This document shows positions 1 through 61,621 of a stretch of 64,000 nt of DNA, in pieces. The stretch spans positions 1 through 64,000 of the forward strand of contig NIVC01001410.1 of the NCBI GenBank assembly GCA_002269645.1. Direction: 5' to 3'. Position 1 is the stretch's first letter. Every line of letters begins with the position of its first letter. The notes beneath the pieces are model-generated. The model ran no database searches, was not told where the DNA came from, and worked only from the letters and a program-made list of their open reading frames with translations. The translations under genes and the position numbers were made by a program. This DNA is from Macrostomum lignano. Taxonomy: Eukaryota.

Positions 1-570
1 GTCTACTCAAACTAATGTGCTTCTACTCAGATAAAGTCTACTCAGATTAGTTTGGAGTCTACTTAGATCAGTGCAGAGTCTACTCAGATCAGTGCAGAGT
101 CTACTCAGATTAGTTGGAGTCTACTTAGATCAGTGCAGAGTCTACTCAGATCAGTGCAGAGTCTACTCAGATCAGTGCAGAGTCTACTCAGATCAGTGCA
201 GAGTCTACTCAGATCAGTGCAGAGTCTACTCAGATCGGTGCAGAGCCTACTCTTATCAGTGCAGAGTCTACTCAGATCAGTGCAGATTCTACTCAGATCA
301 GTGCAGAGTCTACTCAGATTAGTGCAGTCTACTTAGATCAGAGCAGAGTCTACTCAGATCAGTGCAGAGTCTACTCAGATTAGTTTGGAGTCTACTCAGA
401 TCAGTGCAGAGTCTATTCAGATCAGTTTGGAGTCTACTCATATCAGTGCAGAGTCTATTCAGATCAGTGCAGAGTCTACTCAGATCAGTTTGGAGTCTAC
501 TCATATCAGCTTGGAGTCTACTTAGGTCAGTGCAGATTCTACTCAGGTCAGTGCAGAGTCTACTCAGATT
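1..570. repeat. 21-bp minisatellite (CAGTGCAGAGTCTACTCAGAT)n
   Basis: Directly visible tandem unit; explains the 7-aa periodic ORFs at 71-598. Confidence 0.95.
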
Positions 571-628
571 AGTGTGTTTGATCAACTGTGAACTTTGATC
601 AAATATTTATCAACTCTGATCAAACTAG

Positions 629-817
629 AAAATCTTACACCCCTATAACTGTCTCCTGGAAAATCCGCCCAGCCCTGTTGCTGGGTGGCAGCTCCGCAGC
701 GCCAGCAGCGATCGACCAAGCAGCAGCCGCCGCCCCTCCGCCGCCGCCTAGAAACGAGCATGCTGCTAGGCAACTGTTGCTATGGCAACAGCAAGGCCAG
801 AAAAGCAGAGCTGAAGG
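629..817 (+). CDS. Possible upstream exon of the liprin-alpha gene
   Basis: GC-rich open stretch between AG (627-628) and GTAAAA (818); phase-2 end matches the phase-2 start of the exon at 2093. No recognisable motif. Confidence 0.3.
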
Positions 818-1136
818 GTAAAATCTGCATGCTAAAGAGAAGAGCAGATGGCAGACGCCTTGCATTCTTTGTGTCATTTATTCTAGATCTTTGTACGAAG
901 GAATGCCTGACAAGATGAAGCTCTGTAATGCTCATAACGGTAAACCCAGAAAAAGCATGAAACTGAGCATCCTATTCTGCTTAGACAAGTTTTTACAGTC
1001 ACTAATTGTTTGCCATATTTTGTTTACAAGATTTTAATAGATTTTCTATGATGACGAGTGCATAACCGCAACTAATGTAATGCGATTTTTATGCTGAATT
1101 TTTTATGCTTAATTTCTATTACCCAGCCTCCTTAAG

Positions 1137-2045
1137 GCTTCATCATCTTGTCAAGCTCCTTCATCTTGCACAGCTTCATTTCCGAAGTTTCATCATCCTA
1201 TCAAGCTCCGTCATCTCACAGCCTCCTTTCTGAAGCTTCATCATCCCGTCAAGCTCTGTCATCTTACACAGCCTCCTTTCTGAAGCTTCATCATCCGTCA
1301 AGCTCTGTCATCTTACGCAGCCTCCTTTCTGAAGCTTCATCGTATTTGTTAGCTCCTTTATCTTACCCAGCTTCATTTCCGATGCTTCATCATCTTGTCA
1401 GCTCCGTCATCTTACCCAGCCTCCTTTCCTAAGCTTCATCCCGTCAAGCTCCGTCATCTTACCCAGCCTCCTTTCCCAAGCTTCATCATCCCGTCAAGCT
1501 CTGTCATCTTACCCAGCCTCCTTTCCCAAGCTTCATCATCCCGTCAAGCTCTGTCATCTTACACAGCCTCATTCCGAAGCTTCATCATCCCGTCAAGCTC
1601 TGTCATCTTACACAGCTTCATTCCGAAGCTTCATCATCCCGTCAAGCTCCGTCATCTTACCCAGCCTCCTTTCCTAAGCTTCATCCCGTCAAGCTCCGTC
1701 ATCTTACCCAGCCTCCTTTCCTAAGCTTCATCATCCCGTCAAGCTCCGTCATCTTACCCAGCCTCCTTTCCTAAGCTTCATCATCCCGTCAAGCTCCGTC
1801 ATCTTACCCAGCCTCCTTTCCCAAGCTTCATCATCCCGTCAAGCTCTGTCATCTTACCCAGCCTCCTTTCCCAAGCTTCATCATCCAGTGAAGCTCTGTC
1901 ATCTTACCCAGCCTCCTTTCCCAAGCTTCATCATCCCGTCAAGCTCTGTCATCTTACACAGCTTCATTCCGAAGCTTCATCATCTTGCCAAGTTCCATCA
2001 TCTTACCCAGCCTCATTTCCAAAGCTTCTTTATCTCATCAAGCTT
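1137..2045. repeat. ~50-bp intronic minisatellite (AAGCTTCATCATCCCGTCAAGCTCTGTCATCTTACCCAGCCTCCTTTCCC)n
   Basis: Period of 50 visible (CCGTCAAGCT at 1441 and 1491). Confidence 0.95.
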
Positions 2046-2092
2046 TTACAAGCCTGGTCATTCCAAATCGAACTCTTGAAACTGTCTTACAG

Positions 2093-5000
2093 TCAGCGGC
2101 ATGACTCGCGACAGCAGCCGCACTACATTCAGCAGCAGTCGCCAACATCGTCAGCCTCTGGCAGTCAGGAATCTCTGCGTCAGGCCTTCCTGTCTTCGTC
2201 GCCCGTGCCTCGTCAACAGCAGCAGCAGCAGCAACAGCAACAACAACAGCAGCAGCAGAGGCGCAAGCCGAACTCGCTAATGGTCGAATTTTCTTTAAAC
2301 GCGGCGGAACCGGGACGGCCATCGCCGAGTCGCCGACTGTCGCCGCGCCGACGGGAGCTGCTTCCGCGGCGTCGCCGTCTCTGCCGCGATTCAGGCAAAT
2401 TCCGGTGGCCTGCAGTACTTCCACAGCTTGCCTAGGGGCGGGGCGACTGGCGGGACTCCCCGGTGTCGATGGGTGAGCGATTCCCGGTCTGCTGCTGTCT
2501 GGTGTGCTGTCTGATGTGCTGTCTGGTGTGCTGTCTGGTGTGCTGTCTGGTGTGCTGTCTGATGTGCTGTCTGATGTGCTGTCTGATGTGCTGTCTGATG
2601 TGCTGTCTGATGTGCTGTCTGATGTGCTGTCTGGTGTGCTGTCTGATGTGCTGTCTGGTGTGCTGTCTGATGTGCTGTCTGGTGTGCTGTCTGGTGTGCT
2701 GTCTGATGTGCTGTCTGGTGTGCTGTCTGGTGTGCTGTCTGGTGTGCTGTCTGTGCTGTCTGGTGTGCTGTCTGATGTGCTGTCTGGTGTGCTGTCTGGT
2801 GTGCTGTCTGGTGTGCTGTCTGATGTGCTGTCTGGTGTGCTGTCTGATGTGCTGTCTGGTGTGCTGTCTGATGTGCTGTCTGGTGTGCTGTCTGATGTGC
2901 TGTCTGGTGTGCTGTCTGATGTGCTGTCTGATTTGCTGTCTGATTTGCTGTCTGATTTAAACTTGGCTAAACTTGCTTCATCTGTAAAAATTGCAGGAAG
3001 CATCAACGCCCCTCGCCCTTCGACTCCTCGTCCACGGCGTCCGGCCGCCCGTACACGCTGGCCGGGTCGCGTGACGGCTCCATAGCTGGCGGCTCCTCTG
3101 CCGCCTCAACCGTTGTGGCTCCCAGCCCACACGACTTCCTTGGACAGAAGGCGGAAGACAGAAGAAGAAGAAAAAGTGAGACAGGTTTAAGGGATGACTT
3201 GCTAAGGGATTTATGTTGCCGAAGCAGTGCCGACTCTTGAAACACCTTCCCAAATACTCAGTTGCTGGGCCAGCCTCCCAGATCCTCAGTTGCTGGGCCA
3301 GCCTTTCAGATCCTCAGTTGCTGGGCCAGCCTCCCAGATCATCAGTTGCTGGTCCAGCCTTTCAGATCCTCAGTTGCTGGTCCAGCCTCCCAGATCCTCA
3401 GTTGCTGGGCCAGCCTCCAAGATCCTCAGTTGCTGGTCCAGCCTCCCAGATCCTCAGTTGCTGGGCCAGCCTCCCAGATCCTCAGTTGCTGGGCCAGCCT
3501 CCAAGATCCTCAATTGCTGGGCGAGCCTCCCAGATCCTCAGTTGCTGGGCCAGCCTCCAAGATCTTCAGTTGCTGGGCCAGCCTCCAAGATCTTCAATTG
3601 CTGGGCCAGCCTCCAAGATCCTCAATTGCTGGGCCAGCCTCCAAGATCCTCAGTTGCTGGGCCACCGCCACCCTCCCGATCCCTACACTGCCGCCCTGCA
3701 GGGAGGAGCTGCTGGAGGCGGTGATGCGGGAGCGCACCAGCTTTGCCCAGTGGAGCGGGCCCACAGTGGTGGCCTGGCTGGAGCTGTGGGTCGGCATGCC
3801 TGACTGGTACGTGGCCGCCTGCCGGGCCAACGTGAAGTCCGGCGCCATCATGGCGGCGCTGTCCGACCAGGAGATCCAGCGCGAGATCGGCATCTCGAAT
3901 CCGCTGCACCGGCTGAAGCTGCGCCTGGCCGTGCAGGAGATGCTGGCCATCACCGGCCCGGCGTCGGGCGCCGGCGGCGCGGGCAACCCAGTGAGCGGCC
4001 AGATGGGCCACGACTGGGTTGGCAACAGCTGGCTGCCCAGCCTGGGCCTGGCGCAGTACAGATCCGCTTTCATGGAGTGCCTGGTTGACGCCAGGATGCT
4101 GCCGAGGCTGGGCAAGAAAGAGCTGCGGTCGCATCTGCGAATGACCGACGGATTCCATCGCGACTCGTTCGCCTGCGGCGTGCGAGCGCTGCAGCTGCTG
4201 GGCTTCGATAGGGACCTTGGAGGCCAGGCGGGACGCCTGCGAAAACTCGGACACTGGTGAGGCTGGGAGATGTATGGGAGAAGCTGAGTGAGTCTGAAAG
4301 ATGCTGGGAGAGTTTGGAAGAAGCTAAGTGAGTCTGAAAGATGCTGGGAGAGTCTGGAAGAGACTGGATGAGGCTGGAAGAGGGTTGGGTGAGTCTGGAA
4401 GAGACTGGATGAGTCTGGAAGAGGCTGGGTGAGTCTGGAAGAGACTGGATGAGGCTGGAAGAGGCTGGGTGAGTCTGGAAGAGACTGGGTGAGTCTGGAA
4501 GAGACTGGGTGAGTCTGAAAGAGGCTGGGTGAGTCTGGAAGAGGCTAGGTGAGTCTGGAAGAGGCTAGAAGAGGCTAGGTGAGTCTGGAAAGGCTGGGTG
4601 AGTCTGGAAGAGGCTGAGTGAGTCTGGAAGAGGCTAGAAGAGGCTAGGTGAGTCTGAAAGAGGCTGGAAGAGGCTGGGTGAGTCATGAAGAGGCTGGGTG
4701 AGTCTGGAAGAGGCTGGAAGAGGCTGGGTGAGTCATGAAGAGGCTGGGTGAGTCTGGAAGAGGCTGGAAGAGGCTGGGTGAGTCGCACTAGTTCAATATC
4801 CATCGTATCGACAGACTAAATGCAAACTCGAAGGTACAAGAAAAGCTGCACAAGTTTCCAGCAGCAATAGAAGACAGAATTAATGCATTTGGATTACCTC
4901 TTTGCACTGCCCGCAAGACCTGCTGGTCTGGTCAAGCGACCGAGTCTACCGCTGGCTGTGCCGCATCGGCCTGCCACTCTCGTCGGATCTGTCCGCGGCG

Positions 5001-5297
5001 TCGGCGGGCGGCCAGGCGGTTCATCAGCACCCGCTGCAGGAGTCGGGGGTGCACGGCGCTCTAATGCTACTGGACGAGAGCTTCGACTGGTCGACCTTGG
5101 CTCAGCTGCTACTGCTGCCGCAGAACGCGGGCGCCACTCCCGTCAGGCAGCTGCTGGAGCGCGAGTTCAACCAGCTGGTGGGCCGTGAGCGGCGAGGCAC
5201 CGACAGCTGCTGCAGGCGATGCAGCTTCAGCAGCAGCTGTAGCAGCGCATTTCAGCTTGTTGGCTTGTCGCTGGGGCTTGTGGAGAGCCGAAATTAA
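2093..5297 (+). CDS. PPFIA: Liprin-alpha (SYD-2/PPFIA family), 3' part with three SAM domains; exons 2093-2394, 2997-3175, 3702-4256, 4918-5297
   Basis: SAM1 [66 protein letters not shown]2 [31 protein letters not shown] and SAM3 [10 protein letters not shown]...[16 protein letters not shown]...LLEREFNQL match recalled liprin-alpha sequence. Pre-[14 protein letters not shown]. Three single-base frame breaks are needed (near 2283, 3171-3175, 4216). Confidence 0.93.
2490..2958. repeat. 12-bp intronic minisatellite (GTGCTGTCTGAT/GGT)n
   Basis: Directly visible; produces the STPD, CCLV and VLSG artefact ORFs. Confidence 0.95.
3255..3662. repeat. 28-bp intronic minisatellite (CAGATCCTCAGTTGCTGGGCCAGCCTCC)n
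   Basis: GTTGCTGGGC recurs at 3261 and 3289; fills the intron before the SAM1 exon. Confidence 0.95.
4262..4785. repeat. ~20-bp intronic minisatellite (GAGTCTGGAAGAGGCTGGGT)n with 10-bp subunits
   Basis: Directly visible; starts immediately after the donor at 4257. Confidence 0.9.
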
Positions 5298-5309
5298 GAC
5301 AACAGTCAG

Positions 5310-5918
5310 CCCTTGCCCTAACCCCAACTGTATGACCCTTGCCCTAACCCCAACTATATGACCCTTGCCCTAACCCCAACTGTATGACCCTTGCCCTCAC
5401 CCCAACTATATGACCCTTGCCCTCACCCCAACTATATGACCCTTGCCCTCACCCCAACTATATGACCCTTGCCCTCACCCCAACTATATGACCCTTACCC
5501 AAACCCTAACTATATGACCCTTGCCCTAACCCCAACTATATGACCCTTGCCCTCACCCCAACTATATGACCCTTGCCCTCACCCCAACTATATGACCCTT
5601 ACCCAAACCCTAACTATATGACCCTTGCCCTAACCCCAACTATATGACCCTTGCCCTCACCCCAACTATATGACCCTTGCCCTCACTTCAACTATATGAC
5701 CCTTGCCCTCACCCCAACTATATGACCCTTGCCCTCACCCCAACTATATGACCCTTGCCCTCACCCCAACTATATGAACTTGCCCTCACCCCAACTATAT
5801 GACCCTTGCCCTAACCCCAACTATATGAACTTGCCCTCACCCCAACTATATGACCCTTGCCCTCACCCCAACTATATGACCCTTGCCCTAACCCCAACTA
5901 TATGACCCTTGCCCTAAG
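5310..5918. repeat. 26-bp minisatellite (CCCTTGCCCTCACCCCAACTATATGA)n just after the liprin stop
   Basis: Period of 26 visible (CCCCAACTATA at 5400 and 5426); some units contain CCCTAA. Confidence 0.95.
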
Positions 5919-6524
5919 CCTGACAAACCCCTTAAGTGTATTAGTGCACGGAATCGAAGCCGCGGACTGTGACGCGAGAGCCAGGCGCATTACTACTGAT
6001 ATTATGACCCGGCCCTCCTCGGCAGTAGTACAGTAGGCTCATGAATTGGGATTCAGTTTGTACGACTTTCTGCGACCTCAGCGACATGCCCGAGTCGAAC
6101 CCAGTACTTTTTGGTCACTGGCCAGTTTTTACAGCCTGCGGTTTTTCATTCACGGTCTCGATTGGATGCCCTGAATATGCCAGCAAGGCTTTTCAGTTCG
6201 TTTCCGTTGTACAATAAGGTGTTTCCTGTGCATTGGTGCAATATTCACTTAGGTGTGTGTTATACAAATATATTATTATTTAACTGTAGTTCTATGTGAT
6301 GCCCGTTTTATTTTTCGTGCTATTTTCATTGAATCGAATCGCATGTTATTTTTTATCTTACTATTAAATTGTGTTATTGTCTTGTCGCGCAGTAGAAGTC
6401 ATATTTTTTAAATATATAATAGCCTGTAGTTACGTCTGCTGTCTATATGCCCGTATATTTCCGTACGTTGGCTGCATTTCAACATTGAATTCACAAATTA
6501 ATTAGGAAGATATTGTAGACGAAA

Positions 6525-6968
6525 CTCACCCTCCACCAATGTACACACACTCTAGACCAAACCCTACCCCTCCGCCAATGTACACACACTCTAGACCAAA
6601 CCCTACCCCTCCGCCAATGTACACACACTCTTGACCAAACCCTACCCCTCCACCAATGTACACACACTCTTGACCAAACCCTACCCATCCGCCAATGTAC
6701 ACACACTAAACCAAACCCTACCCCTCCGCCAATGTACACACACTCTAAACCAAACCCTACCCCTCCGCCAATGTACACACACTCTAAACCAAACCCTACC
6801 CCTCCGCCAATGTACACACACTCTAAATCAAACCCTATCCCTCCGCCAATGTACACACACTCTAAACCAAACCCTACCCCTCCGCCATTGTACACACACT
6901 AAACCAAACCCTACCCCTCCGCCAATGTACACACACTCTAAATCAAACCCTACCCCTCCGCCAATGTA
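6525..6968. repeat. 39-bp minisatellite (ACCAAACCCTACCCCTCCGCCAATGTACACACACTCTAA)n
   Basis: GTACACACAC recurs at 6541 and 6580. Confidence 0.95.
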
Positions 6969-8024
6969 AACTTACCATCCGTTGGTATCTGATTATTATC
7001 GATTAATTAATTGATATTGATTATTGACAACGAGCGTAGTAATGATATAAATGTATGCCTCTATTCAATATTTTTGTGACAAAACTTTTCATGTTTATAA
7101 AATTATGTTAGCGTGCCTTCACAGTGCTCATTTCGATCGGAATATTCATGCGCCATAAAATAGTTTTTTTAATCAAATTTTAGTTTATTATGTTGTCCAT
7201 CCGCAGATATTTTCTATACTTAATATTTTATTCCTTTCGTTGAAAACAATGAAAAATACGTTTTTCATGACCTGATGTCGCCGTCTCTTGAGTCGCAAAG
7301 TATTAGTTTTGTCTTTATCATTGATTAATATTAAACTGCCTATTCGCATTGCTGTAAGTCCGCTGCTTATAGTCTGTACTTTTAAACTTTGCTTGTTTGT
7401 TTTGATTATGTGTTTGTCTCTTTCACAAAGCACTCAGTGCAATCAATTAATTATTTGGCCAGCAGTTGAGGCACCTGAATGCAAGTGTTTGCAAATGCAT
7501 TTTAATCTTGACAGAACACTGCTATATTGTTATGGCATGAAACTGAAAATTTTTGATTTCTATTTTCCTTTGTCACAGTTACGGATTAGAGACACGTCGT
7601 TTTAGAATCCGTATTAACAAATAAATTTAATCGAAATTGCGTTATTAAGTAATCGCATTCTATTTGGCTTTTATCGGTTTTATTTTTTTAAACTTAATAT
7701 TTTCTTTTCTGCCTACCAAACTCATAGCTATAGCTAGAAAAAGTTATAAACTTGTTTAATACTTTTGTTTATTTTTTAGACCACAAGTTTACTCTCGCTG
7801 TTTCTATTCGATTTTATTTTATTCAACTTTGCTGCATCCTTCTTAGATCAGACTGAATTGTTATATTTTCAACTTGCTTGATTTTTGGCAAATACACTAT
7901 TCATAAGCACTGCATATTGAATACATAAATAGCATTATGAATATTATAGCAAAATCAATTTAGTGTCCGATGCATTGTTGCAGCTAATTTTGAGTTCAGA
8001 TCTACTCTCTGATGTTTGTCCCCT

Positions 8025-8415
8025 CCTACAGCCCCTCCACCCAGCCCCTACCCCTCAGCCCCTACCCCTCAGCCCCTACCCCTCAGCCCCTACCCCTCAG
8101 CCCCTACCCCTCAGCCCCTACCCCTCAGCCCCTACCCCTCAGCCCCTACCCCACAGCCCCTACCCCCCAGCCACTACCCCTCAGCCCCCTACCCCTCAGC
8201 CCCCTACCCCACAGCCCCTACTCCCCAGCCCCCTACCCCACAGCCCCTACCCACAGCCCCTACCCCTCAGCCCCTACCCCACAGCCCCTACCCCACAACA
8301 CCCTACCCCTCAGCCCCCTACCCTACAGCCCCTACCCCACAGCCCCTACCCCACAGCACCCTACCCCTCAGCCCCCTACCCTACAGCCCCCTACCCCACA
8401 GCGCCTACCCCACAG
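8025..8415. repeat. 14-bp C-rich minisatellite (CCCCTACCCCTCAG)n
   Basis: Directly visible; G-quadruplex-prone on the - strand (inference). Confidence 0.95.
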
Positions 8416-8539
8416 AGCCCCCAAACCCAGTGCGCCCCAACCATAAAGTGCCTTCTAAAGGTAACGTACATGTGTAGTGTACGCCCACGCATCACCATTG
8501 ATTGTCATTGTACCAAGCGATAAGGCTACATCAACCGGC

Positions 8540-8775
8540 GAAAGGCATTGCTGCCCATTCCGCCGACTCCCCTGAGCAGGCACACAAGCGCGCGGATACG
8601 TACGCAGTCATACACACAGGCATACGCTCGTACACTCACACAGGAGTGTACAGCAGCCCTAACTTTATTTAATTTATCGTTAGGCATGTACACTTCACTG
8701 TCCCTTTTTGGGGGTTGGCTCTCAAGTTGGCGTTAATTGCACAAGCAGGCCAAGCCGAGATTCAGGCTACACTAA
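8540..8775 (-). mobile_element. Fragment of the SINE-like composite repeat family
   Basis: Reverse complement (CTCGGCTTGG...GCAATTAA...AAGTGTACATGCCTAA...AATAAAGTTAGGGCTGCTGTACACTCCTG) aligns by eye to 12420-12540. Confidence 0.65.
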
Positions 8776-8992: not shown

Positions 8993-10181
8993 TCACAGCT
9001 CCAGCATGAGTTGGATGCTTTTCAGAGCCTCGTACCTGCCCTCAGTCGCATACCTCCACATCATCTTTCGGAGCGAATCAGCTACGGCAGAGGTCGCGTA
9101 GACGCCGCTTGGGTTGCAGAAGGCGCAGCTCGAGTACCACCAGCCGCCGTTGCCGCAAAAGGCCACAGAGCAGCTGGTGCCGGACCTGCCATCGTTGTCC
9201 AGGTCCATAGTATAGAACTGACTGTTATTTTGAAAGGCCAGAGCGTCTCCCGTCATGTTTGAACTGTCACTGAGGTACGAACCGAAGGTCATGGCGTAGT
9301 TCGTACTGGCATCGCCGACGGTGAAGCCGGAGTACTCGGCGATGAACAAGTCGTCAGCCCAGGTGACAGCCTCCACCCTCAGCACTCTCGGAGTTCTGCC
9401 AGTCAGCTCGTTGATGATGAAAAGACCTGGACAAATTCGAGAGAGTAAACTCAACCAAATTTCTTCGTGGCGAAACCCCATTCAGAGCTATGCGTTCTCT
9501 GAAGCATACTAAATGCACTGGAGATAAGGCAAATATATGTTCATTACTGGCCTTAATCTCATCTCATTTCTAAGAAAATCTACTTCAGTTGTCCATGAAT
9601 TCTCACCAATCCAGAAGTCAGTGTCGTCCTCGAAACCATTTTCGTAGGCCGACCACGGCTGCGCGAAGCTCAAACTGCCTTTCTCCCTTTTCAGTATGGC
9701 AAAAAACATCCGCTCGTCTACCATGTCTGAAAGCATGAAATGTAAGATTGTGGCTGTAGTAGAATCTGGATTCTGCAAGTTTTTCTTCTCAGCAATTGTG
9801 CTTACACGGCTCGAGACTGTCGACACGGCGGCGAAAGACCTGACCGCTGCCACCAGCGGCTCCAAAGCTGGCGTTGCGCAGGATGGAGGTGAGGCACCGA
9901 CCTGTTTCGGGCAAAAACACGGCAGCAGAGCAGCGCTTCCTGCCGAGAGCGTCACACTTCATGACGCAATCTCGTTCGCTGCTACCTGGAAAAGCTCTGT
10001 AGCCCGTGCTTATAGTGGGGTCCACTGACTGGACGCAGAACTCTGCATTTGAGAATTAATCGAAATGCCTGTTGGTTCAATTATCTTTTGACACTAGAAA
10101 GTTTTGGTAATTCTTACCCTCTGCCGTACAGCCTGCAAGTAGGAGAATCAGTTTTGCTGCCACCAGAACACAGCGACTCAT
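8993..10181 (-). CDS. Secreted PAN/apple + fibrinogen-C (FReD) lectin, paralog 1; exons 10181-10118, 10042-9806, 9726-9607, 9426-8993; 284 aa
   Basis: Signal peptide MSRCVLVAAKLILLLAGCTAE; PAN-like DCVMKCDALGRKRCSAAVFLPETGRC; FBG motifs WSAYENGFEDDTDFWIG, FYTMDLDND, GGWWYSSCAFCNPSG. All introns GT-AG phase 1; total 855 nt, divisible by 3. Confidence 0.9.
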
Positions 10182-11114
10182 ATTTCGAATGCTCAAGAAA
10201 TGTTTTTTGCTTTTGCTATTCTTCTGCGCAGTTGTGTCGATGCGAGAGGCAGATATACATTTATTGCTGCTAAGCCTTTGTACGAGCTAGCTCTGAGCAA
10301 GTTGAGCTTGCTTTCTACTCCTTTTTTTCTGGGCTTCGTCCGAAACTTTTTATCATTTTATCTGCAGAGAAGCGGCTTATTGTCAAACCCCCTCAAATCC
10401 CTTGGCATCTGAGCAAATAAAGTTAAACAAACAATGCCTCGTATAGCTTTTGTGGAATATCTAAAATTTTTAGAAACTGCTAAGCCAATATCGTGGCGAA
10501 ATGCAAACAGACGAACTGCCATTAGGAAGACTTGAGATCCATAATTTTAGCCATTCCGCACAACGAATTCCTTTTTGAGGGATCCATTACAGTCAGGTCA
10601 AGTGTAGCATTTCTGATGATGCAATTTAGCCACCTGCCCACATTAACCCAATTTGATAAAGCATCTATCTAATGTGGCCTCTTGGTGCCTAGCTCAAACT
10701 TATGGATACAACAGTTATTTTCTGTAACTCTCTCCGAAAACTTTTACCAATCTTCTCAAGACTTCCCTCTAGGCGGTAATTGTTGGGAAGGCAGCTCAAT
10801 TTACTCCATGGATTAAAGCTCATTTTAGTCAACTTGCACATTTATGCCAAAGGCTATTCCCTGTTGATCGAAGATGTAAAGCATACGCTCGTATATTGCC
10901 TTTGACATCCGTAAACCTTCAGTAAGTCTGTGATTTACAAAATGCTTTCGGATATTTCGATAGCACAGTAAGCGCAGCTCATAGCTGAAAGACTAAAAAA
11001 CGGATAAAATTGTATAAAAATTAGGTTAACTTCTTCTCACATTAAATAATGAAGTCTATTGTATTGTATAGCTCAAATGAAAACTTTATTTATTGTGTCA
11101 TGGAGGTTGGCCCT

Positions 11115-11245
11115 AAAGGGATTTAATTGCACGAGCAGACCCAAGCCGAGAATCCAATTTAGCCCCGAGTTAATGTGACTGCCCTTGGCATCGAGTCTGG
11201 CCCGCTGGCACATCAAAAAGCCGCGATGGAACACTTAGGCCGATG
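11115..11245 (-). mobile_element. tRNA-derived SINE-like repeat copy
   Basis: Reverse complement GATGTGCCAGCGGGCCAGACTCGATGCCAAGGGCAGTCACATT...GGGCTAAATTGG...GCAATTAA is homologous to 12360-12455. Confidence 0.65.
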
Positions 11246-11278: not shown

Positions 11279-12822
11279 CTAAACCGCTTTCAGCAGGAGT
11301 CGGATGCTCTTGAGAGCGATCAGGTGTCCATTTGTGGCTCCCTTCCACACAACAGATGTTGCGTCACGAGAAGCGGAGTTCCGATAAATCCCATTCGGAT
11401 TGGAATGGTAGCACTTGCGGTACCACCAGCCGCCATTGCCGTAAGTAGCTGAGCAGGATCCGGAGCTGTGAATTTCATTGTCCCGGTCCATGGTGGAGAA
11501 CTGCATGCCTTTGTGATAGCTGAGCGAATCGCTAGTCATGTTGGAGCTGTCACTCAGGTACAAGCCGAACGTCATAGTGTATTTTGTGCTGGCGTCACCC
11601 ACGGTGAAGCCGGAGTACTCAGCCACGTACAGGACATTCGACCAGGTGACGGCCTCGACTCTCAGCAGCTTCGGGGCGCTGCCAGTCAACTGGTTGATGG
11701 TTCGAAGACCTGCGAATATTGAGTTTGAATGCAAACTTTAACCTTACATACTTCAGCATAATCCTGACTGGACCCTGGTTCAGTACACCAACCCAGCCAG
11801 AAGTCGGTGCCGTCTCCAAAGCCGGTCTCATACTCAGTCCAGCATCTGGCAAAGCTCAGCCTTCCAACCAGTCGCTGCTGAATCACAGTGAATTTCCTGC
11901 CTTCAACCTGCACTGCCGGCTCTGAAACAGCAAAATTGAATTTGCACCGGTGTAAAAGGTCTTGAACATCAAAATACAACACATAGCAGCTCCTTACGGG
12001 ATCGAAGCAATTGCCTCCGATAGACGGGTTTGCCAGGTGCAGCGGCGGAGAAGTCGGCGCCCCAGACCGCGGACATCAGGCAGAGCTTAGTCTCCGACAG
12101 GAAGGCGGTGGCCGCGCATTCACAAGTAGAGACGGCGGCACATTTTGTGATGCAGTCGACGACACTCCGTCTAGACGATGACGTCATCGAAGCAGCCTGC
12201 ACTGGGGCTGCCGATGTTGTAGAGAATTCAGCAGCTGAAGAATTTGCCAGAGAATATTTTATTAGAAATGAGAGACTTTTTACCAGTTTCATAGATAACT
12301 GCGTGCATGTAGGTCGTAGCCATCTGATAAAAGGGGCCGTAGTGGTCTGGTGCGTCGCTCGGATGTCCCAGCGGCCCAGGCTCGATTCCAAGTGCAGTCA
12401 CATTCATGTGAGGGCTAAATTGGAACCTTGGCTTGGGGCTACTCATGCAATTAATACCTTTGAAGGCAAAACACAATGGCACAGTAAAGTGTACATGCCT
12501 AATGATAAATAAAGTTAGGCCGCTGTACACTCCTGAGTGAGTGTGTGCCTGTGCGTATGACTGCGTGTGTATCCGCTCGCTTTTGTGCCTGCTCAGGGGA
12601 GGCAGTAATGCCTCTCACCGGTTGTGGGACAACCGGTTTTTGTCGCTTAAAGTGCGCCAGGGTGCACCCAGCCCCTGCATCAAATATTCGTAAAAACAAT
12701 AAAACCCCATATGCTCCTAGTGTTGCTACAACTTAGGATTATGGCTTACCTGTGCCATCAGTTGCACTGACGAACGCAGCAACTTGAGTTGTCAGAGTAA
12801 TTATTGTACAAAGGCCTTTAAT
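11279..12822 (-). CDS. PAN/apple + fibrinogen-C lectin, paralog 2; exons 12822(or 12833)-12750, 12234-11998, 11960-11793, 11709-11279; first codon is ATT
   Basis: FBG motifs WTEYETGFGDGTDFWLG, FSTMDRDNE, GGWWYRKCYHSNPNG; 237-nt PAN exon; phase-1 introns. The leader-like exon IKGLCTIITLTTQVAAFVSATDGT has a GTAAGC donor and the same 73-nt length as the first exon of paralog 4. Confidence 0.85.
12335..12685 (+). mobile_element. SINE-like composite element in intron 1 of lectin paralog 2
   Basis: A-box-like GTAGTGGTCTGG and B-box-like GGCTCGATTCC, followed by AATAAA and the GGCCGCTGTACACTCCTG...AAGTGCGCCAGGGTGC module also seen at 8640 and 60000. Confidence 0.6.
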
Positions 12823-13858
12823 TTTGGGTCGACCTGGGGTGAACAGAAAAGTTAGCCAGAGAGATTATTCTATCCTATTAGCAGCACGAGAGCTTTCGCC
12901 ATCTCACTGAAACCACGACTCATGTCGTTTATATCGCTTGCTAAGTAAAAGCAAATTTGATTTTCGTTCATTCAAAAAATGCGTTCTGCGTGGCATCTAT
13001 CGAACTCGGTTGGAATACGCCAGAGATGAGCACTCTTCAAGATGGGGAAGAGGCGGGCAAACACAGGACGACAGGAATTGAGATGGACTGGAAGATGCAG
13101 CAGTTGCAGGGAGCCCTCCTATTGCCTTGGAGTTAAAAAACGCGGTTTGGAGACGTTACGGAGCTGCGAAAATTTCTGGTTTTTCAAATTTAAGTGCATC
13201 TACGAGTATGTATAGACGCGACTCTGTAAGAGGGCCGTTTAAGTTGATTGACAGCTTGGAAAGCAGAAATTTTGCCTTGCCTGATACTCGTAAAGTCAGA
13301 GCCAATGCTGCATGCTTGAAGAAGTTACTGACGCTCTGTCAAATATTTTGAAAGAGTTTTTAATCATCACAAGTGTTATATATTAGAATGTTTCTGCAAG
13401 CTATAATTATATCTAGATTACATGGGATGCCTGTTATTAAGAAGTATAGTTTTCTAACCCAGATACAGGCTCAATACAGGCTGCTTGTAATATAGTTGAC
13501 AAAGCCGATGGAATTTTAATAGTTTCCAGTTTCAAGGAGAGGTTATAGCTGCTGCCTGTGAGCGCATGTGTCCACTTGGCGTGCCTAAAAACTCGTAATT
13601 AGCAGAGCACAGCTCATTAACTTGGTTGCTGATGATAAGGAACCAAACAGAGTGCAAACCGCATTTGCTTTTGCTAGCAATGTTTCTTTTTAAAGATAAT
13701 TGCTGCGAAAACGTTAAACTCGAATTCCAGGCACTCGGTGTTGAATACACCATTGCCACAGCATGGTTAAAGCAAGCAGCCAACTGTCATCGTGACAGTT
13801 TGAGAGTGATGCTTCAACAACTGCCAGTTCCGCTCTTACTCTCAAAATTTTAACACAG

Positions 13859-15050
13859 CTAAACCGCTTTCAGCAGGAGTCGGATGCTCTTGAGAGCGGT
13901 CACGTATCCATTTGTGGCTCCCGTCCACACTACGGAGTTTGTGTCATAAGAACCAGAGTTTCTATAAATCCCATTCGGATTCGAATGGTAGCAACTGCGG
14001 TACCACCAGCCGCCATTGCCGTAAGTAGCTGAGCAGGATCCGGAGCTGTGAATTTCATTGTCCCGGTCCATGGTGGAGAACTGCATGCCTCTGTGATAGC
14101 TAAGCGAGTCGCGAGTCATGTTGGAGCTGCCAGTCAGGTACGAGCCGAAGGTCATGGTGTATTTTGTGCTGGCATCGCCCACGATGAAGCCGGAGTACTC
14201 AGCGACGTACAGGACATTCGACCAGGTGACGGCCTCGACTCTCAGAAGCTTCGGGGCGCTTCCGGTCAGCTCGTGAATCGAACGGAGACCTTGGAAAAGC
14301 ATTTTATACTTATAGATCCTCGAGTGGCACTGTGTGCAATCGGAGCAGTGATATTAAATTCAAACGGAGACTCCACTTACCAATCCAAAAGTCGGTGCCG
14401 TCTCCAAAGCCAGTCTCGTACTCAGACCACGGACGGGCAAAACTCACACTTCCTGTGAGTCGCTGCTGAATGACTACAAACGCTGTGGCTCCAACGCAAA
14501 CATACGGTTCTACGGAACAGTTAGAAAATTGCATTCTTAGTAGTAAAAACAAAGTATTAACTTTCAAAAATGCCCAAAACCTCAAGAGCGACAGTGCTCG
14601 GTGTTGTCAGCTTACTAGATCGAAGCAGCCGCCTTCGATAGACGGGTCTGCCGGGTGCTGCGGCGGAGAAGTCGGCGCCCCAGACCGCGGACATCAGGCA
14701 GAGCTTCGTCTCCGGCACGAAAGCGGAAGCCGCACATTCGCAAGGAGGGACGGCGGCGCATTTTGTGACGCACTCGACGCCACTCCGTCCAGCCGATGAC
14801 GTCATTGCAGCAGCCTCTACCTGCGCTGCCGGTGCGCTCGAGAACTCATTGCCTGGCAATTGTTTGTCAATAACATCAGTAGCTACAAAAAATAAAAATC
14901 CTTGTTCTCAAAGATGAAGTTTAAGGAATTTTGATACTCTTTAGAATGATCGATCCAAAACAGAAGCTGCATACCTGATGATTTGGCAATCGCGCAGCAT
15001 ACAGCTGCAATGAGGACAAAAGTGGTAGGGTTAATCATTTTTAAAATCAT
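13859..15050 (-). CDS. PAN/apple + fibrinogen-C lectin, paralog 3; exons 15050-14975, 14852-14616, 14509-14381, 14289-13859; 290 aa
   Basis: Signal peptide MILKMINPTTFVLIAAVCCAIAKSS; PAN ECVTKCAAVPPCECAASAFVPETKLC; FBG VVIQQRLTGSVSFARPWSEYETGFGDGTDFWIG and GGWWYRSCYHSNPNG. All phase-1 GT-AG introns; 873 nt in frame. Confidence 0.9.
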
Positions 15051-15587: not shown

Positions 15588-15755
15588 TGACAAAATGACC
15601 TGAAAGAAATGGGGAGCACGGGATGACCTAAAGCGGACAAAATGACACATGGGACAAAATGACACATTGGACAAAATGACCTGAAAGAAATGGGGAGCAC
15701 GGGATGACCTAAAGCGGACAAAATGACACATAGGACAAAATGACAAAATGACAGA
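15588..15755. repeat. ~80-bp tandem duplication rich in ACAAAATGAC
   Basis: AAAATGACCTGAAAGAAATGGGGAGCACGGGATGACCTAAAGCGGAC occurs twice. Confidence 0.8.
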
Positions 15756-15889
15756 ATTTTTAGGGGCCTTCATTCTCCCTTCACTCTCCGTTTACTCCTC
15801 TCCCTTTTGATCTCCGCCTTCTTTTTCCCTGGCCTTCCTACTCTGTGCAGCTTTAAAGGTTGAGTGAGAATAACTTCGGAGTTACGCGT

Positions 15890-15990
15890 CTCTATGTGTG
15901 TATCTGTCTATGTCTGTTTGTCTGTTTCTGTATGTTTGTGTGTCTGCCTGTCTGTGTCTGTCTGCTTTAGTTTGTTTGTGTCTGTCTGTT

Positions 15991-16037
<47 letters not shown>

Positions 16038-16345
16038 GACTGTTTCTGAATGCCTGTGTGTCTGCCTGTCTGTGTATATGCCTGTTTGTCTGTCTGCCTG
16101 TCTGTCTGACTGCTTCTGTCTGTCTGACTGTTTTGTATGTCTGTGTGTCTGTCTTTGTCTGTTTATATGTTTCTGTATGTCTGTGTGTCTGCCTGTCTGT
16201 GTCTGTCTGCGTCAGTTTGTTTGTTGTCTTTCTGTCTGTGTCTGCTTGTTTCTGTCTGTCTGTCTGTCTGTCTGACTGTTTCTGTATGTCTGTGTGTCGG
16301 GTCTGTCTGTGTCTGTTTGAGTCTCTGTGTGTCTGGATGTCTATA
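15890..16345. repeat. Degenerate (GTCT)n microsatellite
   Basis: Directly visible. Confidence 0.95.
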
Positions 16346-17053
16346 TGCATGATTCGGAATGCTACACAATGATGATTAATCATAAATTAATTAAAAATCT
16401 TCGTTATGATTGTCAATAGTAGTGGATCGCTCATTATTACAAGCTACTAAGTATTGAAAATAAGTACGGTAGTTAGCTATGGATATGGACATTGCGTTAA
16501 GATACATTTAAGTAGACATCATATATTGCATTGATAGGATACAGACAATAGTTTGTCGACAAATTCCGCTAAATGCATACAAAATATAAAAATAATAGAA
16601 ACAAAAAACAGCAAAATTAAATTGAAATTGAAATTGAAAAGAAATTTATACGAGTACATGCAAAAATGTAATTCGGGGTGTAAATAGTGCCCTAATACGA
16701 GCTAAGCGCTTCTTATAGGAAGCCGAATCATGAAACTATGACTCAGGTAAATGTATGCAAAAACGCAAATAACGATGATTAGTTTGTCTTTAGTCTTTTG
16801 TTTTTCACATCATTAAAAAACGCTTCAGGCGCTGTTTGCAGGTCGTTTTGGATGCTTTCATATTCATATTCAGAGCATGGCGAAACTTTGGAGTTTGTTC
16901 GTCATCGCTATTCTGATGATCTTCCAATTGGTGAACCGTGCTGACCCAATCACGGGTAGGAGGGTCATAACCGTGACCATAGCAGGCCACCACAATTTCC
17001 CGCATTGCCAGTAAGCAAATACTGTTCGCCTGGCCTCGAAACTGCGTTCTTAC

Positions 17054-33699
<16,646 letters not shown>

Positions 33700-35683: not shown

Positions 35684-35990
35684 AGGTTGGCCCTCATGTG
35701 CGCTAATTGCATGGCACTCCATACGGCCAGTTTCTCTGTGCCTTGGAGGGTTGGCCCTCATGTGCACTAATTGCATGGCTCTCCATACGGCCAGTTTCTC
35801 TGTGCCTTGGAGGGTTGGCCCTCATGTGCGCTAATTGCATGGCACTCCATACGGCCAGTTTCTCTGTGCCTTGGAGGGTTGGCCCTCATGTGCGCTAATT
35901 GCATGGCACTCCATACGGCCAGTTTCCCTGTGCCTTGGAGGGTTGGCCCTCATGTGCGCTAATTGCATGGCACTCCATACGGCCAGTTTC
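35684..35990. repeat. 64-bp tandem repeat, ~5 copies
   Basis: GGTTGGCCCTCATGTGCGCTAATTGCATGGCACTCCATACGGCCAGTTTCTCTGTGCCTTGGAG; ORF offsets of 64. Confidence 0.95.
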
Positions 35991-36581
35991 AAATTAATGT
36001 GACGTTGGTTTCAAACCAAAACAAAGTAATCGTTTGGTGCATTGGCATCTTAAATTGTGACTCACAGTTATTGAGTTACAGTTATTTTTTACAATCAATG
36101 TTGTAGCATTTTGTTTGCGCATTTTTTCATTCCGTTGACAAATTTGGTAACCTCTCTGCTTTTAATTTCAAAGACATTTTCTTGATACTTTTTCTGAAAA
36201 GATTGAAGGTAGCAAATATTACCTTCCAGGTAGCTATTTATATCGTTTCCGATTGCCTCACAGATTGCTTAATTAGGAAGCGTAAGGATTTGGGAATTAA
36301 GGAAGAGCATATTAAATATGGAATTTTAACTCTAGAAATTCCCATTTTAACCCGCGGCCTAGTACTGAGAAAGCATAAAAAATAAATAATTCATAAAACC
36401 CGGTTGGCAGCAGGAATCTTAGTAAAACTCGGTCGCAAATCCGATTGAGGTTGTGGGAAATTTATTAAAATGCATTTGCTATGAGGATATTTTCGATTTT
36501 TTTCAAATTAGCGTTCCATCTTCTATATTTCATCATTAGGAGGCTTAAAAGACTGGAATGGAAGTAGAGATGAACCATCGA

Positions 36582-46134: not shown

Positions 46135-46278
<144 letters not shown>

Positions 46279-60346: not shown

Positions 60347-61621
60347 TTACAGCAACAGAAGGCGAATGCTCTTTAACGACAGGTAATTGTTTGCTTCAGC
60401 GCCTTTCCACACCATAAAGTCAGCTCCAATTACTTCCGAGAATGAAAATCTTCCGTTAGGATTCACGCCATGACAGTTGTTATACCACCAGCCGCCATAA
60501 CCGTATGATTTCGAGCAGGAGCCACTGAGAAGGTCATTGTCGCGGTCGAATGTAGAGAACTGCATGCCTTTGTGATAAGCGAATGATTCGACAGTCATGT
60601 TGGAGCTGCTAATCAGGTACGAGCCGAACGTCATAGTGTATTTTGTGCTGGCGTCACCCACGGTGAAGCCGGAGTACTCAGCCACGTACAGGACATTCGA
60701 CCAGGTGACGGCCTCGACTCTCAGCAGCTTCGGGGCGCTGCCAGTCAACCGGTTGATGGTTCGAAGACCTGCGAATATTGAGTTCAAATACAAAATTTAG
60801 CCTTACATACTTCAGCATAATCCTGACTGGACCCTGGTTCAGTACACCTACCAAGCCAGAAGTCGGTGCCGTCTCCAAAGCCGGTCTCATACTCAGTCCA
60901 GCATCTGGCAAAGCTTAGCCTTCCAACCAGTCGCTGCTGAATCACAGTGAATGTCCTGCCTTCAACCTGCACTGCCGGCTCTGAAACAGCAAAATTGAAT
61001 TTGCACCGGTGTAAAAGGTCTTGCAAATCAAAATACAACACATAGCAGCTCCTTACGGGATCGAAGCAGTTGCCTCCGATAGACGGGTTTGCCAGGTGCA
61101 GCGGCGGAGAGGTCGGCGCCCCAGACCGCGGACAGCAGGCAGAGCTTCGTCTCCGACAGGAAGGCGGTGGCCGCGCATTCGCAAGGAGAGACGGTGGCGC
61201 ACTTTGCGGCGCACTCGATGCCGCTTTCGCAAGCAGATGACGTCATCACAGCGGCTTCGGTTGGAGTGGTTACGGCATTGACAAACTTGACAGCTGCAAG
61301 GTTATTCAGAAGTGTAAAACGTTTGATGTAATCAATCTGCTACGGCCAACAGGGGACAAAGTAGCTTCAATGCGCGGCCGGTACTAATCTGGGCTCGCAA
61401 AATTCTCAAAATTTCACGGTATGACTGGGCAAACATCAAGGTCTTTGGTAAAAGTCCTTTCTAAAATACCAAATGACTAAATAACTTTTCCATGGAACAC
61501 TGGATCATGGATAGTGTTCGGTGTGGACTGTGTTTGGGCAGGACTTACTCGTACCAGCGTCCGTCGCGACAATCTCGGTCGCAATAATAAAAACGAGAAC
61601 GAAAAACTTAGCGATGGCCAT
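60347..61621 (-). CDS. PAN/apple + fibrinogen-C lectin, paralog 4; exons 61621-61549, 61293-61057, 61019-60852, 60768-60347; 299 aa
   Basis: Signal peptide MAIAKFFVLVFIIATEIVATDAGT with a GTAAGT donor; 237-nt PAN exon; FBG FSTFDRDND and GGWWYNNCHGVNPNG; phase-1 introns; 900 nt in frame. Confidence 0.92.

What the first reader, a model, noticed from the sequence alone, without database searches (positions are those of the whole stretch)
11279..12080. Lectin paralog 2 is a mosaic of paralog 4 (49 kb away) and paralog 3
Seen: about 11563-12080, including the 83-bp and 37-bp introns and the 168-nt exon, is nearly identical to about 60622-61139 of paralog 4, while paralog 3 has different intron and exon lengths there (91, 106, 129). 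Yet 11417-11510 is identical over 94 nt to 13997-14090 of paralog 3, where paralog 4 diverges strongly. The switch lies inside the last exon (about 11510-11563), just upstream of the FSTxDRDN...GGWWY region. Established: that C-terminal part of FBG domains holds the calcium and ligand-binding site. Inference: gene conversion or unequal crossing-over is swapping ligand-binding modules onto shared scaffolds, an innate-immune diversification mechanism reminiscent of snail FREPs.
Basis: partly seen in the sequence, partly recalled or inferred. Interest (0 to 1): 0.78.

Follow-up and report, generated by a model that had tools for sequence, protein, structure and literature searches.

The report
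Gene-conversion patch between flatworm lectin genes
Two fibrinogen-type lectin genes 49 kb apart in a flatworm genome share a nearly identical 0.58-kb core, introns included, because one copied it from the other by gene conversion; this is real but ordinary in gene families and does not show a dedicated immune diversification system.

Summary
It matches paralog 3 perfectly over 95 nt (11416-11510).

The breakpoints are 12136|12130 and 11570|11551. Inside them 68 of 72 informative sites group P2 with P4; outside only 13 of 124 do (Fisher p 5e-34; 0 of 200,000 permutations reach the observed value). Segment trees conflict at 99-100% bootstrap.

Homology gives a 129-nt exon and introns of 76 and 83 bp.

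The best explanation is ordinary germline interlocus gene conversion of a tract of about 575 bp. Its direction is unresolved, and synonymous sites lean towards P4 being the recipient. The tract covers the conserved core, and its ends fall where similarity between the paralogs collapses. The 5' end cuts through the N-terminal domain, dN/dS is below 1, and the proteins have no IgSF domain. P2 also lacks a detectable signal-peptide exon and has a weak splice donor. The comparison with snail FREP diversification is therefore unsupported. Interest is low to moderate.

The parts
11279..12234 (-). Paralog 2 (P2) gene body. Exons 12234-11998, 11921-11793 and 11709-11279 (237, 129 and 431 nt). Introns 11997-11922 (76 bp) and 11792-11710 (83 bp). 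Stop codon TAG at 11281-11279.
   Evidence: Splice model and intact reading frame. Intron positions match M. lignano Mlig012238. Pfam Fibrinogen_C E 5e-41.
11552..12135 (-). Conversion tract shared with P4 (P4 counterpart 60611-61194, offset +49059, no indels). It covers the 3' 60% of exon 1, intron 1, exon 2, intron 2 and the 5' third of exon 3.
   Evidence: 564/584 identical over the tract. Intron 1 is 74/76 identical, intron 2 77/83, exon 2 126/129. There is a 128-nt perfect run at 11563-11690. dS between P2 and P4 is 0.049.
12130..12136 (-). 5' breakpoint interval (residues 34-36). It lies inside the N-terminal Cys-rich domain, just after its helix.
   Evidence: Maximum-likelihood two-breakpoint fit. 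Residue mapping onto the structure model.
11551..11570 (-). 3' breakpoint interval (residues 169-176, TFGLYLSD), at the transition from the B subdomain to the P subdomain of the FBG domain.
   Evidence: The secondary structure of the model shows the last long B strands ending just upstream.
11416..11510 (-). 95-nt block identical to P3 13996-14090. It encodes GMQFSTMDRDNEIHSSGSCSATYGNGGWWYR, the calcium-site and disulfide core of the P subdomain. Probably a separate, recent exchange between P2 and P3.
   Evidence: The probability of such a run, given 24 differences in 279 sites, is 6e-4.
11279..11550 (-). Segment C, the P3-like 3' part of exon 3 (P subdomain plus the C-terminal strands).
   Evidence: P2-P3 91.4% identical with dS 0.148. 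P2-P4 62.6% identical with dS 1.45. Homology to P3 stops at the stop codon.
12137..12234 (-). Segment A, the P3-like 5' part of exon 1. It carries many substitutions private to P2.
   Evidence: P2-P3 78.8% identical, P2-P4 55.6%. Private residues are listed.
11787..11792 (-). Intron 2 donor of P2 is GTTGGT (T at +3). P4 has GTAGGT, P3 GTAAGT and P1 GTGAGA at the same position.
13859..15038 (-). Paralog 3 (P3). Exons 14852-14616, 14509-14381 and 14289-13859. Introns 106 and 91 bp. Putative signal-peptide exon 15038-14975.
60347..61621 (-). Paralog 4 (P4). Exons 61293-61057, 60980-60852 and 60768-60347. Introns 76 and 83 bp. Putative signal-peptide exon 61621 to about 61555.
8993..10181 (-). Paralog 1 (P1), used as the outgroup. 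Exons 10042-9806, 9726-9607 and 9426-8993. Signal-peptide exon 10181-10118.

Best explanation
The window carries four minus-strand genes of a Macrostomum-type family of secreted lectin-like proteins. Each has a Cys-rich N-terminal domain followed by a fibrinogen-related (FBG) domain that lacks the A subdomain.

P2 and P4 lie 49 kb apart. They share a tract of about 575 bp (11552-12135 and 60611-61194) that one copied from the other by germline interlocus (ectopic) gene conversion. This most likely happened during repair of a double-strand break or gap. The two best-conserved coding stretches, roughly 12112-12023 and 11683-11564, served as homology anchors, and everything between them (both introns and exon 2) was copied along.

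The tract stops where paralog similarity collapses. That is why its 3' end coincides with the start of the fast-evolving ligand-binding P subdomain.

Outside the tract P2 resembles its tandem neighbour P3. That resemblance is limited to exons and is uneven: 79% in segment A, 91% in segment C, and a perfect 95-nt block. P2 and P3 have therefore exchanged sequence too, at least once recently.

Shown: the mosaic pattern, its significance, intron identity, and the absence of flank homology. Inferred: the repair mechanism, the anchors, and the order of events.

The direction of the main tract is unresolved. I put about 55-60% on P2 (or a P2/P3-type gene) as donor and P4 as recipient, and about 40-45% on the reverse.

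Overall this is ordinary concerted evolution of a lectin multigene family. As a by-product it produces genes that combine one core with different binding subdomains. It is not a dedicated diversification system.
For: - Mosaic statistics.
- Ungapped 96.6-97.1% identity through both introns.
- dS between P2 and P4 in the tract is 0.049, against 1.45 in both flanking segments.
- There is no detectable similarity between P2 and P3 introns, between 3' flanks, or between the P2 upstream region and the signal exons of the other paralogs (shuffle p 0.05-0.94). No flanking DNA was exchanged, so this is conversion and not crossing-over or a fresh duplication.
- The tract ends coincide with the edges of three-way 90-95% identity: sliding windows, exact runs.
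- P2 carries private substitutions in every segment, and P2 and P4 differ at 20 of 584 tract positions. P2 is therefore not a trivial mis-join or polishing copy.
- Direction: synonymous p-distance between P2 and P3 in the exonic parts of the tract (0.32) equals that in segment A (0.29). For P3-P4 it is 0.27 in those parts against 0.67 in segments A and C (Fisher p 7e-7). P4's segment C is about as far from P2 and P3 (56-59% amino-acid identity) as from M. lignano family members (50-52%).
- Against a specialised mechanism: the 5' breakpoint falls inside a domain, dN/dS is 0.1-0.57 in all segments, and only Fibrinogen_C plus a sub-threshold PAN match is found.
Against: - Only four paralogs from one 64-kb window were available. 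An unsampled paralog could be the true donor of any segment.
- No reads or second assembly of this species could be found. The best database protein is only 61% identical, so an assembly artefact is argued against, not excluded.
- Either direction needs at least one extra event. If P2 is the donor, P3's intron 1, exon 2 and intron 2 must have been replaced or have diverged unusually fast. If P4 is the donor, both anchors must have been homogenised between P3 and P4 earlier.
- The coincidence of the 3' end with a subdomain boundary is also what a selected module exchange would predict. Pairwise dN/dS on about 90 codons has little power to detect diversifying selection.
Confidence: 0.8

Rival explanations
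1. One reading: conversion or recombination is a selected, perhaps programmed, mechanism that shuffles ligand-binding P subdomains onto shared scaffolds to diversify an innate immune lectin repertoire, as proposed for snail FREPs.
For: The 3' breakpoint (residues 169-176) lies at the transition from the B subdomain to the P subdomain. The P subdomain is the ligand-binding and most variable part of FBG domains (PMC5928061). P4 and P2/P3 differ in pocket-region residues, for example NNCHGV against RKCYHS. P2 has exchanged sequence with two partners recently. Gene conversion is cited as a source of BgFREP diversity (PMC12074976).
Against: The copied tract is the conserved core, and P2's P subdomain is merely P3-like. 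The 5' breakpoint cuts through the N-terminal domain. Both ends track the decay of nucleotide identity. dN/dS is below 1 everywhere. No IgSF domain is present. P2 lacks a signal-peptide exon and has a GTTGGT donor. There are no data on expression, on immunity or on somatic variation. I found no paper on FBG proteins of Macrostomum.
Confidence: 0.1
2. Unequal crossing-over or non-allelic homologous recombination created a hybrid gene from P3 and P4.
For: The paralogs are in the same orientation on one chromosome segment. A chimeric coding sequence exists.
Against: There are two switches, not one. P2's flanks match neither P3's nor P4's flanks. All three genes are still present. A crossover between genes 46-49 kb apart would delete or duplicate the interval between them.
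Confidence: 0.03
3. Assembly or polishing artefact: reads from P4 and P3 were mis-assigned, producing a chimeric consensus at P2.
For: No independent reads or assembly were available to check. The window is very rich in repeats.
Against: P2 differs from P4 at 20 positions spread over the 584-bp tract. It differs from P3 at 8.6% of sites in segment C and 21% in segment A, and it has private variants in all segments. An artefact would give stretches of 100% identity to the sources. P2's flanks are unique sequence.
Confidence: 0.04
4. No exchange occurred: similarity between P2 and P4 in the core reflects strong purifying selection on a conserved scaffold.
For: The core encodes the most conserved protein segments of the family.
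Against: Introns are 93-97% identical and synonymous divergence in the tract is 0.049. Over the same exons P3 shows dS of 0.39-0.96 and its introns cannot be aligned.
Confidence: 0.01

Closest known systems
Interlocus (ectopic) gene conversion and concerted evolution in multigene families (textbook cases such as globin, MHC and opsin genes; cited from my own knowledge)
   Same: A patch of a few hundred bp of near-identity that includes introns and silent sites. It is flanked on both sides by sequence of different ancestry, the flanks are not exchanged, and the tract ends are limited by homology.
   Different: Nothing in principle. The case is new only in that it involves a macrostomid flatworm lectin family and partners 49 kb apart.
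Biomphalaria glabrata FREPs (fibrinogen-related proteins)
   Same: A multigene family of FBG-domain proteins in a lophotrochozoan. Gene conversion plus point mutation is cited as the source of their diversity (PMC12074976).
   Different: FREPs are defined by one or two N-terminal IgSF domains plus FBG (PMC7588048). None is present here, so in snail terminology these proteins would be FReDs. From my own knowledge, the snail diversification was reported as somatic and mainly in IgSF1. Here there is one germline assembly and the tract covers the conserved core.
Ficolins and tachylectin-5A (acetyl-group-binding FBG lectins)
   Same: FBG B and P subdomains. P2 matches ficolin-2 at E 1e-28. The model of the M. 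lignano homolog superposes on L-ficolin over 185 residues at 2.1 A. The FSTxDxDN calcium motif, the Cys-Cys pair and GGWWY are conserved.
   Different: There is no collagen-like region, and the A subdomain is missing (the Pfam match starts at profile position 32-45). It is replaced by a Cys-rich N-terminal domain with only a sub-threshold PAN match. Binding activity is untested.
Uncharacterised Macrostomum lignano 'Fibrinogen C-terminal domain-containing proteins' (for example BOX15_Mlig012238g1)
   Same: The same domain layout, the same four-exon structure and the same intron positions. Amino-acid identity is 50-61%. P1 is 78-86% identical to Mlig028202 in the C-terminal half.
   Different: A different species. 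No conversion analysis or function has been published for them, as far as my searches show.
Pseudogene-templated gene conversion of chicken immunoglobulin V genes (cited from my own knowledge)
   Same: It would be a parallel only if P2 is a non-functional copy that donates sequence to a functional gene (P4).
   Different: The chicken process is somatic, AID-dependent and unidirectional. There is no evidence here for any of these, nor evidence that P2 is non-functional.

Membership tests
Fibrinogen-related domain (FBG/FReD) proteins | Significant match to the Fibrinogen_C profile (PF00147) | tested here: met
   All four paralogs match, E 8e-28 to 4e-42 and bit scores 98-145 against a cut-off of 22.
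Fibrinogen-related domain (FBG/FReD) proteins | Complete three-subdomain (A, B, P) architecture | tested here: not met
   The profile match starts at position 32-45 of 221 and the ficolin-2 alignment starts at chain residue 41, so the A subdomain is absent.
Fibrinogen-related domain (FBG/FReD) proteins | P-subdomain calcium-site motif and disulfide (FSTxDxDND ... C ... GGWWY ... C) | tested here: met
   P2 and P3 have FSTMDRDNE, with Glu at the second acidic position. P4 has FSTFDRDND and P1 has YTMDLDNDG. The Cys pair and GGWWY are present in all four, and these columns are invariant or nearly so in the family alignment. Metal binding itself was not tested.
Fibrinogen-related domain (FBG/FReD) proteins | FBG fold | tested here: met
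   Tested on the 61%-identical M. lignano homolog only. The AlphaFold2 model has pLDDT 81. Foldseek against L-ficolin gives E 6e-15 and 185 residues at 2.1 A.
Biomphalaria-type FREPs | One or two N-terminal IgSF domains upstream of the FBG domain (PMC7588048) | tested here: not met
   Pfam finds no Ig-type domain at E up to 0.1. The N-terminal domain gives only a sub-threshold PAN_1 match.
Biomphalaria-type FREPs | Somatic diversification within individuals | not testable with these tools
   Only one assembled sequence is available. This needs amplicon or long-read sequencing of tissues.
Ficolins | Collagen-like region N-terminal to the FBG domain | tested here: not met
   There is no Collagen match and no Gly-X-Y repeats in the translated exons.
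Interlocus gene conversion event | Statistically supported change of nearest relative along the gene, with incongruent segment trees | tested here: met
   Fisher p 5e-34, 0 of 200,000 permutations reach the observed value, and segment trees have 99-100% bootstrap support.
Interlocus gene conversion event | An internal patch bounded on both sides by other ancestry, that is, two switches | tested here: met
   Breakpoints at 12136|12130 and 11570|11551.
Interlocus gene conversion event | Similarity extends through introns and synonymous sites, so it is DNA-level copying and not selection | tested here: met
   Introns are 74/76 and 77/83 identical, and dS is 0.049.
Interlocus gene conversion event | Flanking DNA is not exchanged | tested here: met
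   There is no significant similarity between P2's flanks and those of P3 or P4.
Interlocus gene conversion event | Donor and recipient identified | tested here: inconclusive
   The synonymous-site pattern leans towards P2-type as donor and P4 as recipient, but both directions need an extra event. This needs orthologous loci or the full set of paralogs.
Hybrid gene made by unequal crossing-over | A single switch, with the flanks of each parent retained on either side | tested here: not met
   There are two switches and the flanks match neither parent.

The most novel reading that the evidence does not exclude
Recurrent germline conversion gated by sequence similarity keeps one common core across tandem and distant family members, while the N-terminal and P-subdomain ends escape it. 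The family then behaves as a combinatorial lectin system. P2, which lacks a signal peptide and has a weakened splice site, acts as a silent cassette that shuttles sequence between the P1-P3 cluster and P4. That would be a flatworm counterpart of pseudogene-templated receptor diversification.
Probability: 0.08. Interest if true: 0.6.

Novelty: new member of a known kind. Interest (0 to 1): 0.27.

Why it matters
The finding gives a clean, statistically solid example of interlocus gene conversion acting over 49 kb in a macrostomid flatworm lectin family.

In practice it means that gene trees, orthology calls and dN/dS estimates for this family must be made segment by segment. It also means the nearest relative of a gene differs between its core and its binding subdomain.

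It offers a simple reason why breakpoints in lectin families tend to fall at the edge of the variable binding subdomain: conversion cannot spread into diverged sequence. No dedicated shuffling mechanism needs to be invoked.

It does not open a new question or reveal a new kind of system.

Tried and rejected
(1) P2 as a retrocopy, or as a copy that lost its first intron. The sequence just upstream of P2 exon 1 looked by eye like the end of P3's signal exon. Local alignments of P2 12330-12235 against the signal exons of P1, P3 and P4 are no better than shuffles (p 0.05-0.74), and the 3' UTRs are also unrelated. Rejected.

(2) A signal-peptide exon for P2. A scan of 12235-13858 for ATG, a hydrophobic stretch and a phase-1 GT donor found nothing. 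The same scan found clear candidates for P1, P3 and P4. An in-frame upstream ATG at 12292 gives MKLVKSLSFLIKYSLANSS, which is weakly hydrophobic.

(3) Residual homology between P2 and P3 introns, which would be expected if the two genes were simple sisters at dS of about 0.4. None was found (p 0.18 and 0.50).

(4) Positive selection on the P subdomain. dN/dS is 0.51 for P2-P3 and 0.26 against P4 in segment C, and 0.56 in the last 134 nt. There is no signal, though power is low.

(5) One repair event that switched templates from P4 to P3. This is unlikely. A 52-nt stretch like neither paralog (11511-11562) separates the two blocks, and their ages differ.

(6) Folding P2 itself.

(7) An independent copy of this species' sequence. 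The protein search returned nothing above 61% identity, so I ran no further search on it.

(8) Literature. I found no paper on Macrostomum FBG proteins and nothing relevant for fibrinogen-related proteins plus concerted evolution.

(9) P2 as a gene captured by a transposable element. Repeat copies in inverted orientation bracket the gene, but a third copy and fragments lie next to P1 and P4, and no element ends could be defined. Left as an observation.
Full report
WHAT IS THERE

The finding lies in a gene on the minus strand. A tblastn search with the translated exons finds four paralogs in the window, all on the minus strand: P1 about 8993-10052, P2 11282-12238, P3 13862-14847 and P4 60353-61297. 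All four match Pfam Fibrinogen_C strongly (E 8e-28 to 4e-42). The match starts only at profile position 32-45 of 221, so the A subdomain is missing. In its place is a Cys-rich N-terminal domain with a sub-threshold PAN match. There is no IgSF domain and no collagen-like region.

The closest database proteins are 13 uncharacterised 'Fibrinogen C-terminal domain-containing proteins' of the flatworm Macrostomum lignano, with a best identity of 61%. P1 is 78-86% identical to one of them in its C-terminal half. The window therefore comes from a macrostomid flatworm related to M. lignano but probably not M. lignano itself. The solved structures closest in sequence are ficolin-2, angiopoietin-like proteins, tenascins and tachylectin-5A. 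An AlphaFold2 model of the M. lignano homolog (pLDDT 81) superposes on L-ficolin over 185 residues at 2.1 A.

GENE MODEL

The M. lignano gene Mlig012238 has four exons: a signal peptide exon, an intron just before the 'EF' motif, an intron after 'RRLxS', and an intron directly after 'FWLG'. The same positions give open, in-frame models for all four paralogs here.
- P2: exons 12234-11998, 11921-11793 and 11709-11279, with introns of 76 and 83 bp.
- P4: the same exon 1 and exon 2 lengths and the same intron lengths; its last exon is 9 nt shorter (422 against 431).
- P3: the same exon lengths as P2, with introns of 106 and 91 bp.

The ficolin-2 alignment runs through FWLG without a gap. The only in-frame alternative, GTAAGG at 11747, gives 174 nt and 38 bp and inserts 15 residues that no homolog has. 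Exon 2 is 129 nt in all three genes, and only the introns differ.

P1, P3 and P4 each have a convincing signal-peptide exon upstream. P2 has none in the 1.6 kb up to P3. Its intron 2 donor is GTTGGT, where the others have GTAGGT, GTAAGT and GTGAGA. It also has a private Ser-to-Leu change at a serine conserved in the family. P2 may therefore be decaying, although all three exons remain open.

CHECK OF THE OBSERVATION

P2 11563-12080 against P4 60622-61139 is 503/518 identical with no gaps. P2 11417-11510 against P3 13997-14090 is 94/94 identical, and the perfect run is 95 nt.

A plot of informative sites shows three blocks, not two. P2 groups with P3 from 12230 to 12136, with P4 from 12130 to 11570, and with P3 again from 11551 to the stop codon. 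The best two-breakpoint model puts the switches at 12136|12130 and 11570|11551. Inside them 68 of 72 informative sites have P2=P4; outside, 13 of 124 do (Fisher p 4.7e-34). A 3SEQ-type maximum descent is 64, against a maximum of 28 in 200,000 permutations.

With P1 as outgroup, parsimony-informative sites give (P2,P3) 8:0:1 in segment A, (P2,P4) 29:0:1 in segment B and (P2,P3) 19:1:4 in segment C. Bootstrap support is 99-100% for each.

WHY THIS IS GENE CONVERSION

Inside the tract (11552-12135, 564/584 identical) the two introns are 74/76 and 77/83 identical, and the synonymous distance is 0.049. The flanking coding segments of the same gene pair have dS of about 1.45. This is DNA-level copying, not selection.

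There are two switches. Nothing outside the coding region of P2 resembles the flanks of P3 or P4, and the introns of P2 and P3 are no more alike than shuffled sequence. This excludes a crossover product and a recent duplication that carried its flanks.

A mis-join or polishing artefact would leave stretches of 100% identity to the sources. Instead P2 differs from P4 at 20 positions spread over the tract. It differs from P3 by 8.6% in segment C and by 21% in segment A, and it has private substitutions in every segment. I could not check reads, because no sequence of this species is in the databases I could search.

WHY THE BREAKPOINTS LIE WHERE THEY DO

Sliding windows show two stretches, roughly 12112-12023 and 11683-11564, where all three paralogs are 90-100% identical. 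Beyond them P4 drops to 44-72% identity with P2 and P3. Exact runs are listed.

The tract ends at the outer edges of these two stretches. The simplest mechanism is repair of a break or gap anchored in these two conserved stretches, with the divergent interior (intron 1, exon 2, intron 2) copied from the donor. Extension stops where mismatches become dense. This part is inference.

The 3' end falls at residues 169-176 (TFGLYLSD), just after the last long B-subdomain strands and before the loop-rich P subdomain. The P subdomain is the ligand-binding and most variable part of FBG domains (PMC5928061).

The 5' end falls at residues 34-36, in the middle of the N-terminal domain. That is not what an exchange of whole modules would look like.

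Segment C also contains the C-terminal strands that return to the B sheet, so it is not a clean 'module'.

MORE THAN ONE EVENT

P2 and P3 are 91.4% identical in segment C (dS 0.148) but only 78.8% identical in segment A (dS 0.37). Segment C contains a 95-nt perfect block whose chance probability is 6e-4. The homology between P2 and P3 ends exactly at the stop codon. P2 has thus also exchanged exon sequence with its tandem neighbour P3, at least once recently.

P3 and P4 are themselves uneven. Their synonymous p-distance is 0.27 in the two conserved stretches against 0.67 in segments A and C (Fisher p 7e-7).

WHICH GENE IS THE MOSAIC?

Three sequences cannot tell. The synonymous p-distance between P2 and P3 in the exonic parts of the tract (0.32) equals that in segment A (0.29). 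This fits P2 being native throughout and P4 having received a P2-type core. P4's own ends are about as far from P2 and P3 (56-59% amino-acid identity in segment C) as from M. lignano family members (50-52%). Under that scenario P3's intron 1, exon 2 and intron 2 (about 330 bp) must have been replaced or have diverged rapidly.

The reverse direction, P4 to P2, instead needs an earlier homogenisation of both conserved stretches between P3 and P4. I put about 55-60% on P4 as recipient. The title 'paralog 2 is a mosaic' describes the pattern correctly but may name the wrong gene.

THE IMMUNE-DIVERSIFICATION READING

Reviews cite gene conversion and point mutation as sources of BgFREP diversity (PMC12074976). 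However, FREPs are defined by IgSF domains plus FBG (PMC7588048), and these proteins have none.
- The conversion copied the conserved core, not the binding subdomain.
- P2's binding subdomain is just P3-like.
- Pairwise dN/dS is 0.10-0.57 in every segment.
- Nothing is known about expression or function, and I found no paper on FBG proteins of Macrostomum.
- One germline assembly cannot show somatic variation.

The by-product is real: genes that share a core but carry different P subdomains. The evidence fits ordinary concerted evolution limited by sequence divergence.

VERDICT

Gene conversion is well supported, with confidence about 0.8 for the overall explanation. Its direction is unresolved. 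The FREP-like diversification mechanism is unsupported, at about 0.1. This is a new member of a known kind, of low to moderate interest.

Noticed in passing
window 35-8415, 15589-33620, 35685-47205, 63614-64000: The window is packed with minisatellite arrays: about 25 arrays with periods of 12-90 bp. Examples are 17137-17953 (30 bp x 27 copies, 97% matches), 19705-21917 (24 bp x 92 copies), 25321-28055 (23 bp x 119 copies) and 44525-44820 (33 bp x 9 copies, 100% matches).
   Followed up: no
window 8532-8763 (+), 11089-11214 (+), 12362-12624 (-), fragments at 60002-60119: A dispersed repeat, 74-79% identical between copies, lies next to the lectin genes. Two copies in inverted orientation bracket P2, 65 bp below its stop codon and about 130 bp above exon 1. 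It may be a MITE-like element. No element ends or target-site duplications could be defined.
   Followed up: partly
window 11787-11792, 12235-13858, 11561-11563: P2 shows signs of decay although its exons are open. It has no detectable signal-peptide exon, a GTTGGT donor at intron 2, and a private Ser172Leu change at a serine conserved in the family.
   Followed up: partly
window 14290-14615 (P3 intron 1, exon 2 and intron 2): P3 has a contiguous stretch of about 330 bp that is far more diverged from P2 and P4 (58-70% in exon 2, introns not alignable) than the exon sequence on either side (88-95%). P3's exon 2 peptide (KPYVCVGATAF...) is also the odd one out against the M. lignano homologs. 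This may be a patch from a paralog outside the window.
   Followed up: partly
window 8993-10181 (P1) against M. lignano P0003: P1 is 78-86% identical to M. lignano Mlig028202 in the C-terminal half of the FBG domain but only 30-51% identical in the N-terminal half. Similarity is thus uneven between species as well.
   Followed up: no
all four paralogs, N-terminal 80 residues (for example P2 12234-11998): The FBG domains lack the A subdomain and carry instead a Cys-rich domain of about 60 residues with a helix and a small sheet. Pfam gives only a sub-threshold PAN_1 match (E 0.018). This layout is shared with the M. lignano family.
   Followed up: partly
window 49181-50953 (-): A long open exon encodes MyTH4 and RA-like domains, so part of an unrelated gene lies between the P1-P3 cluster and P4.
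   Followed up: no
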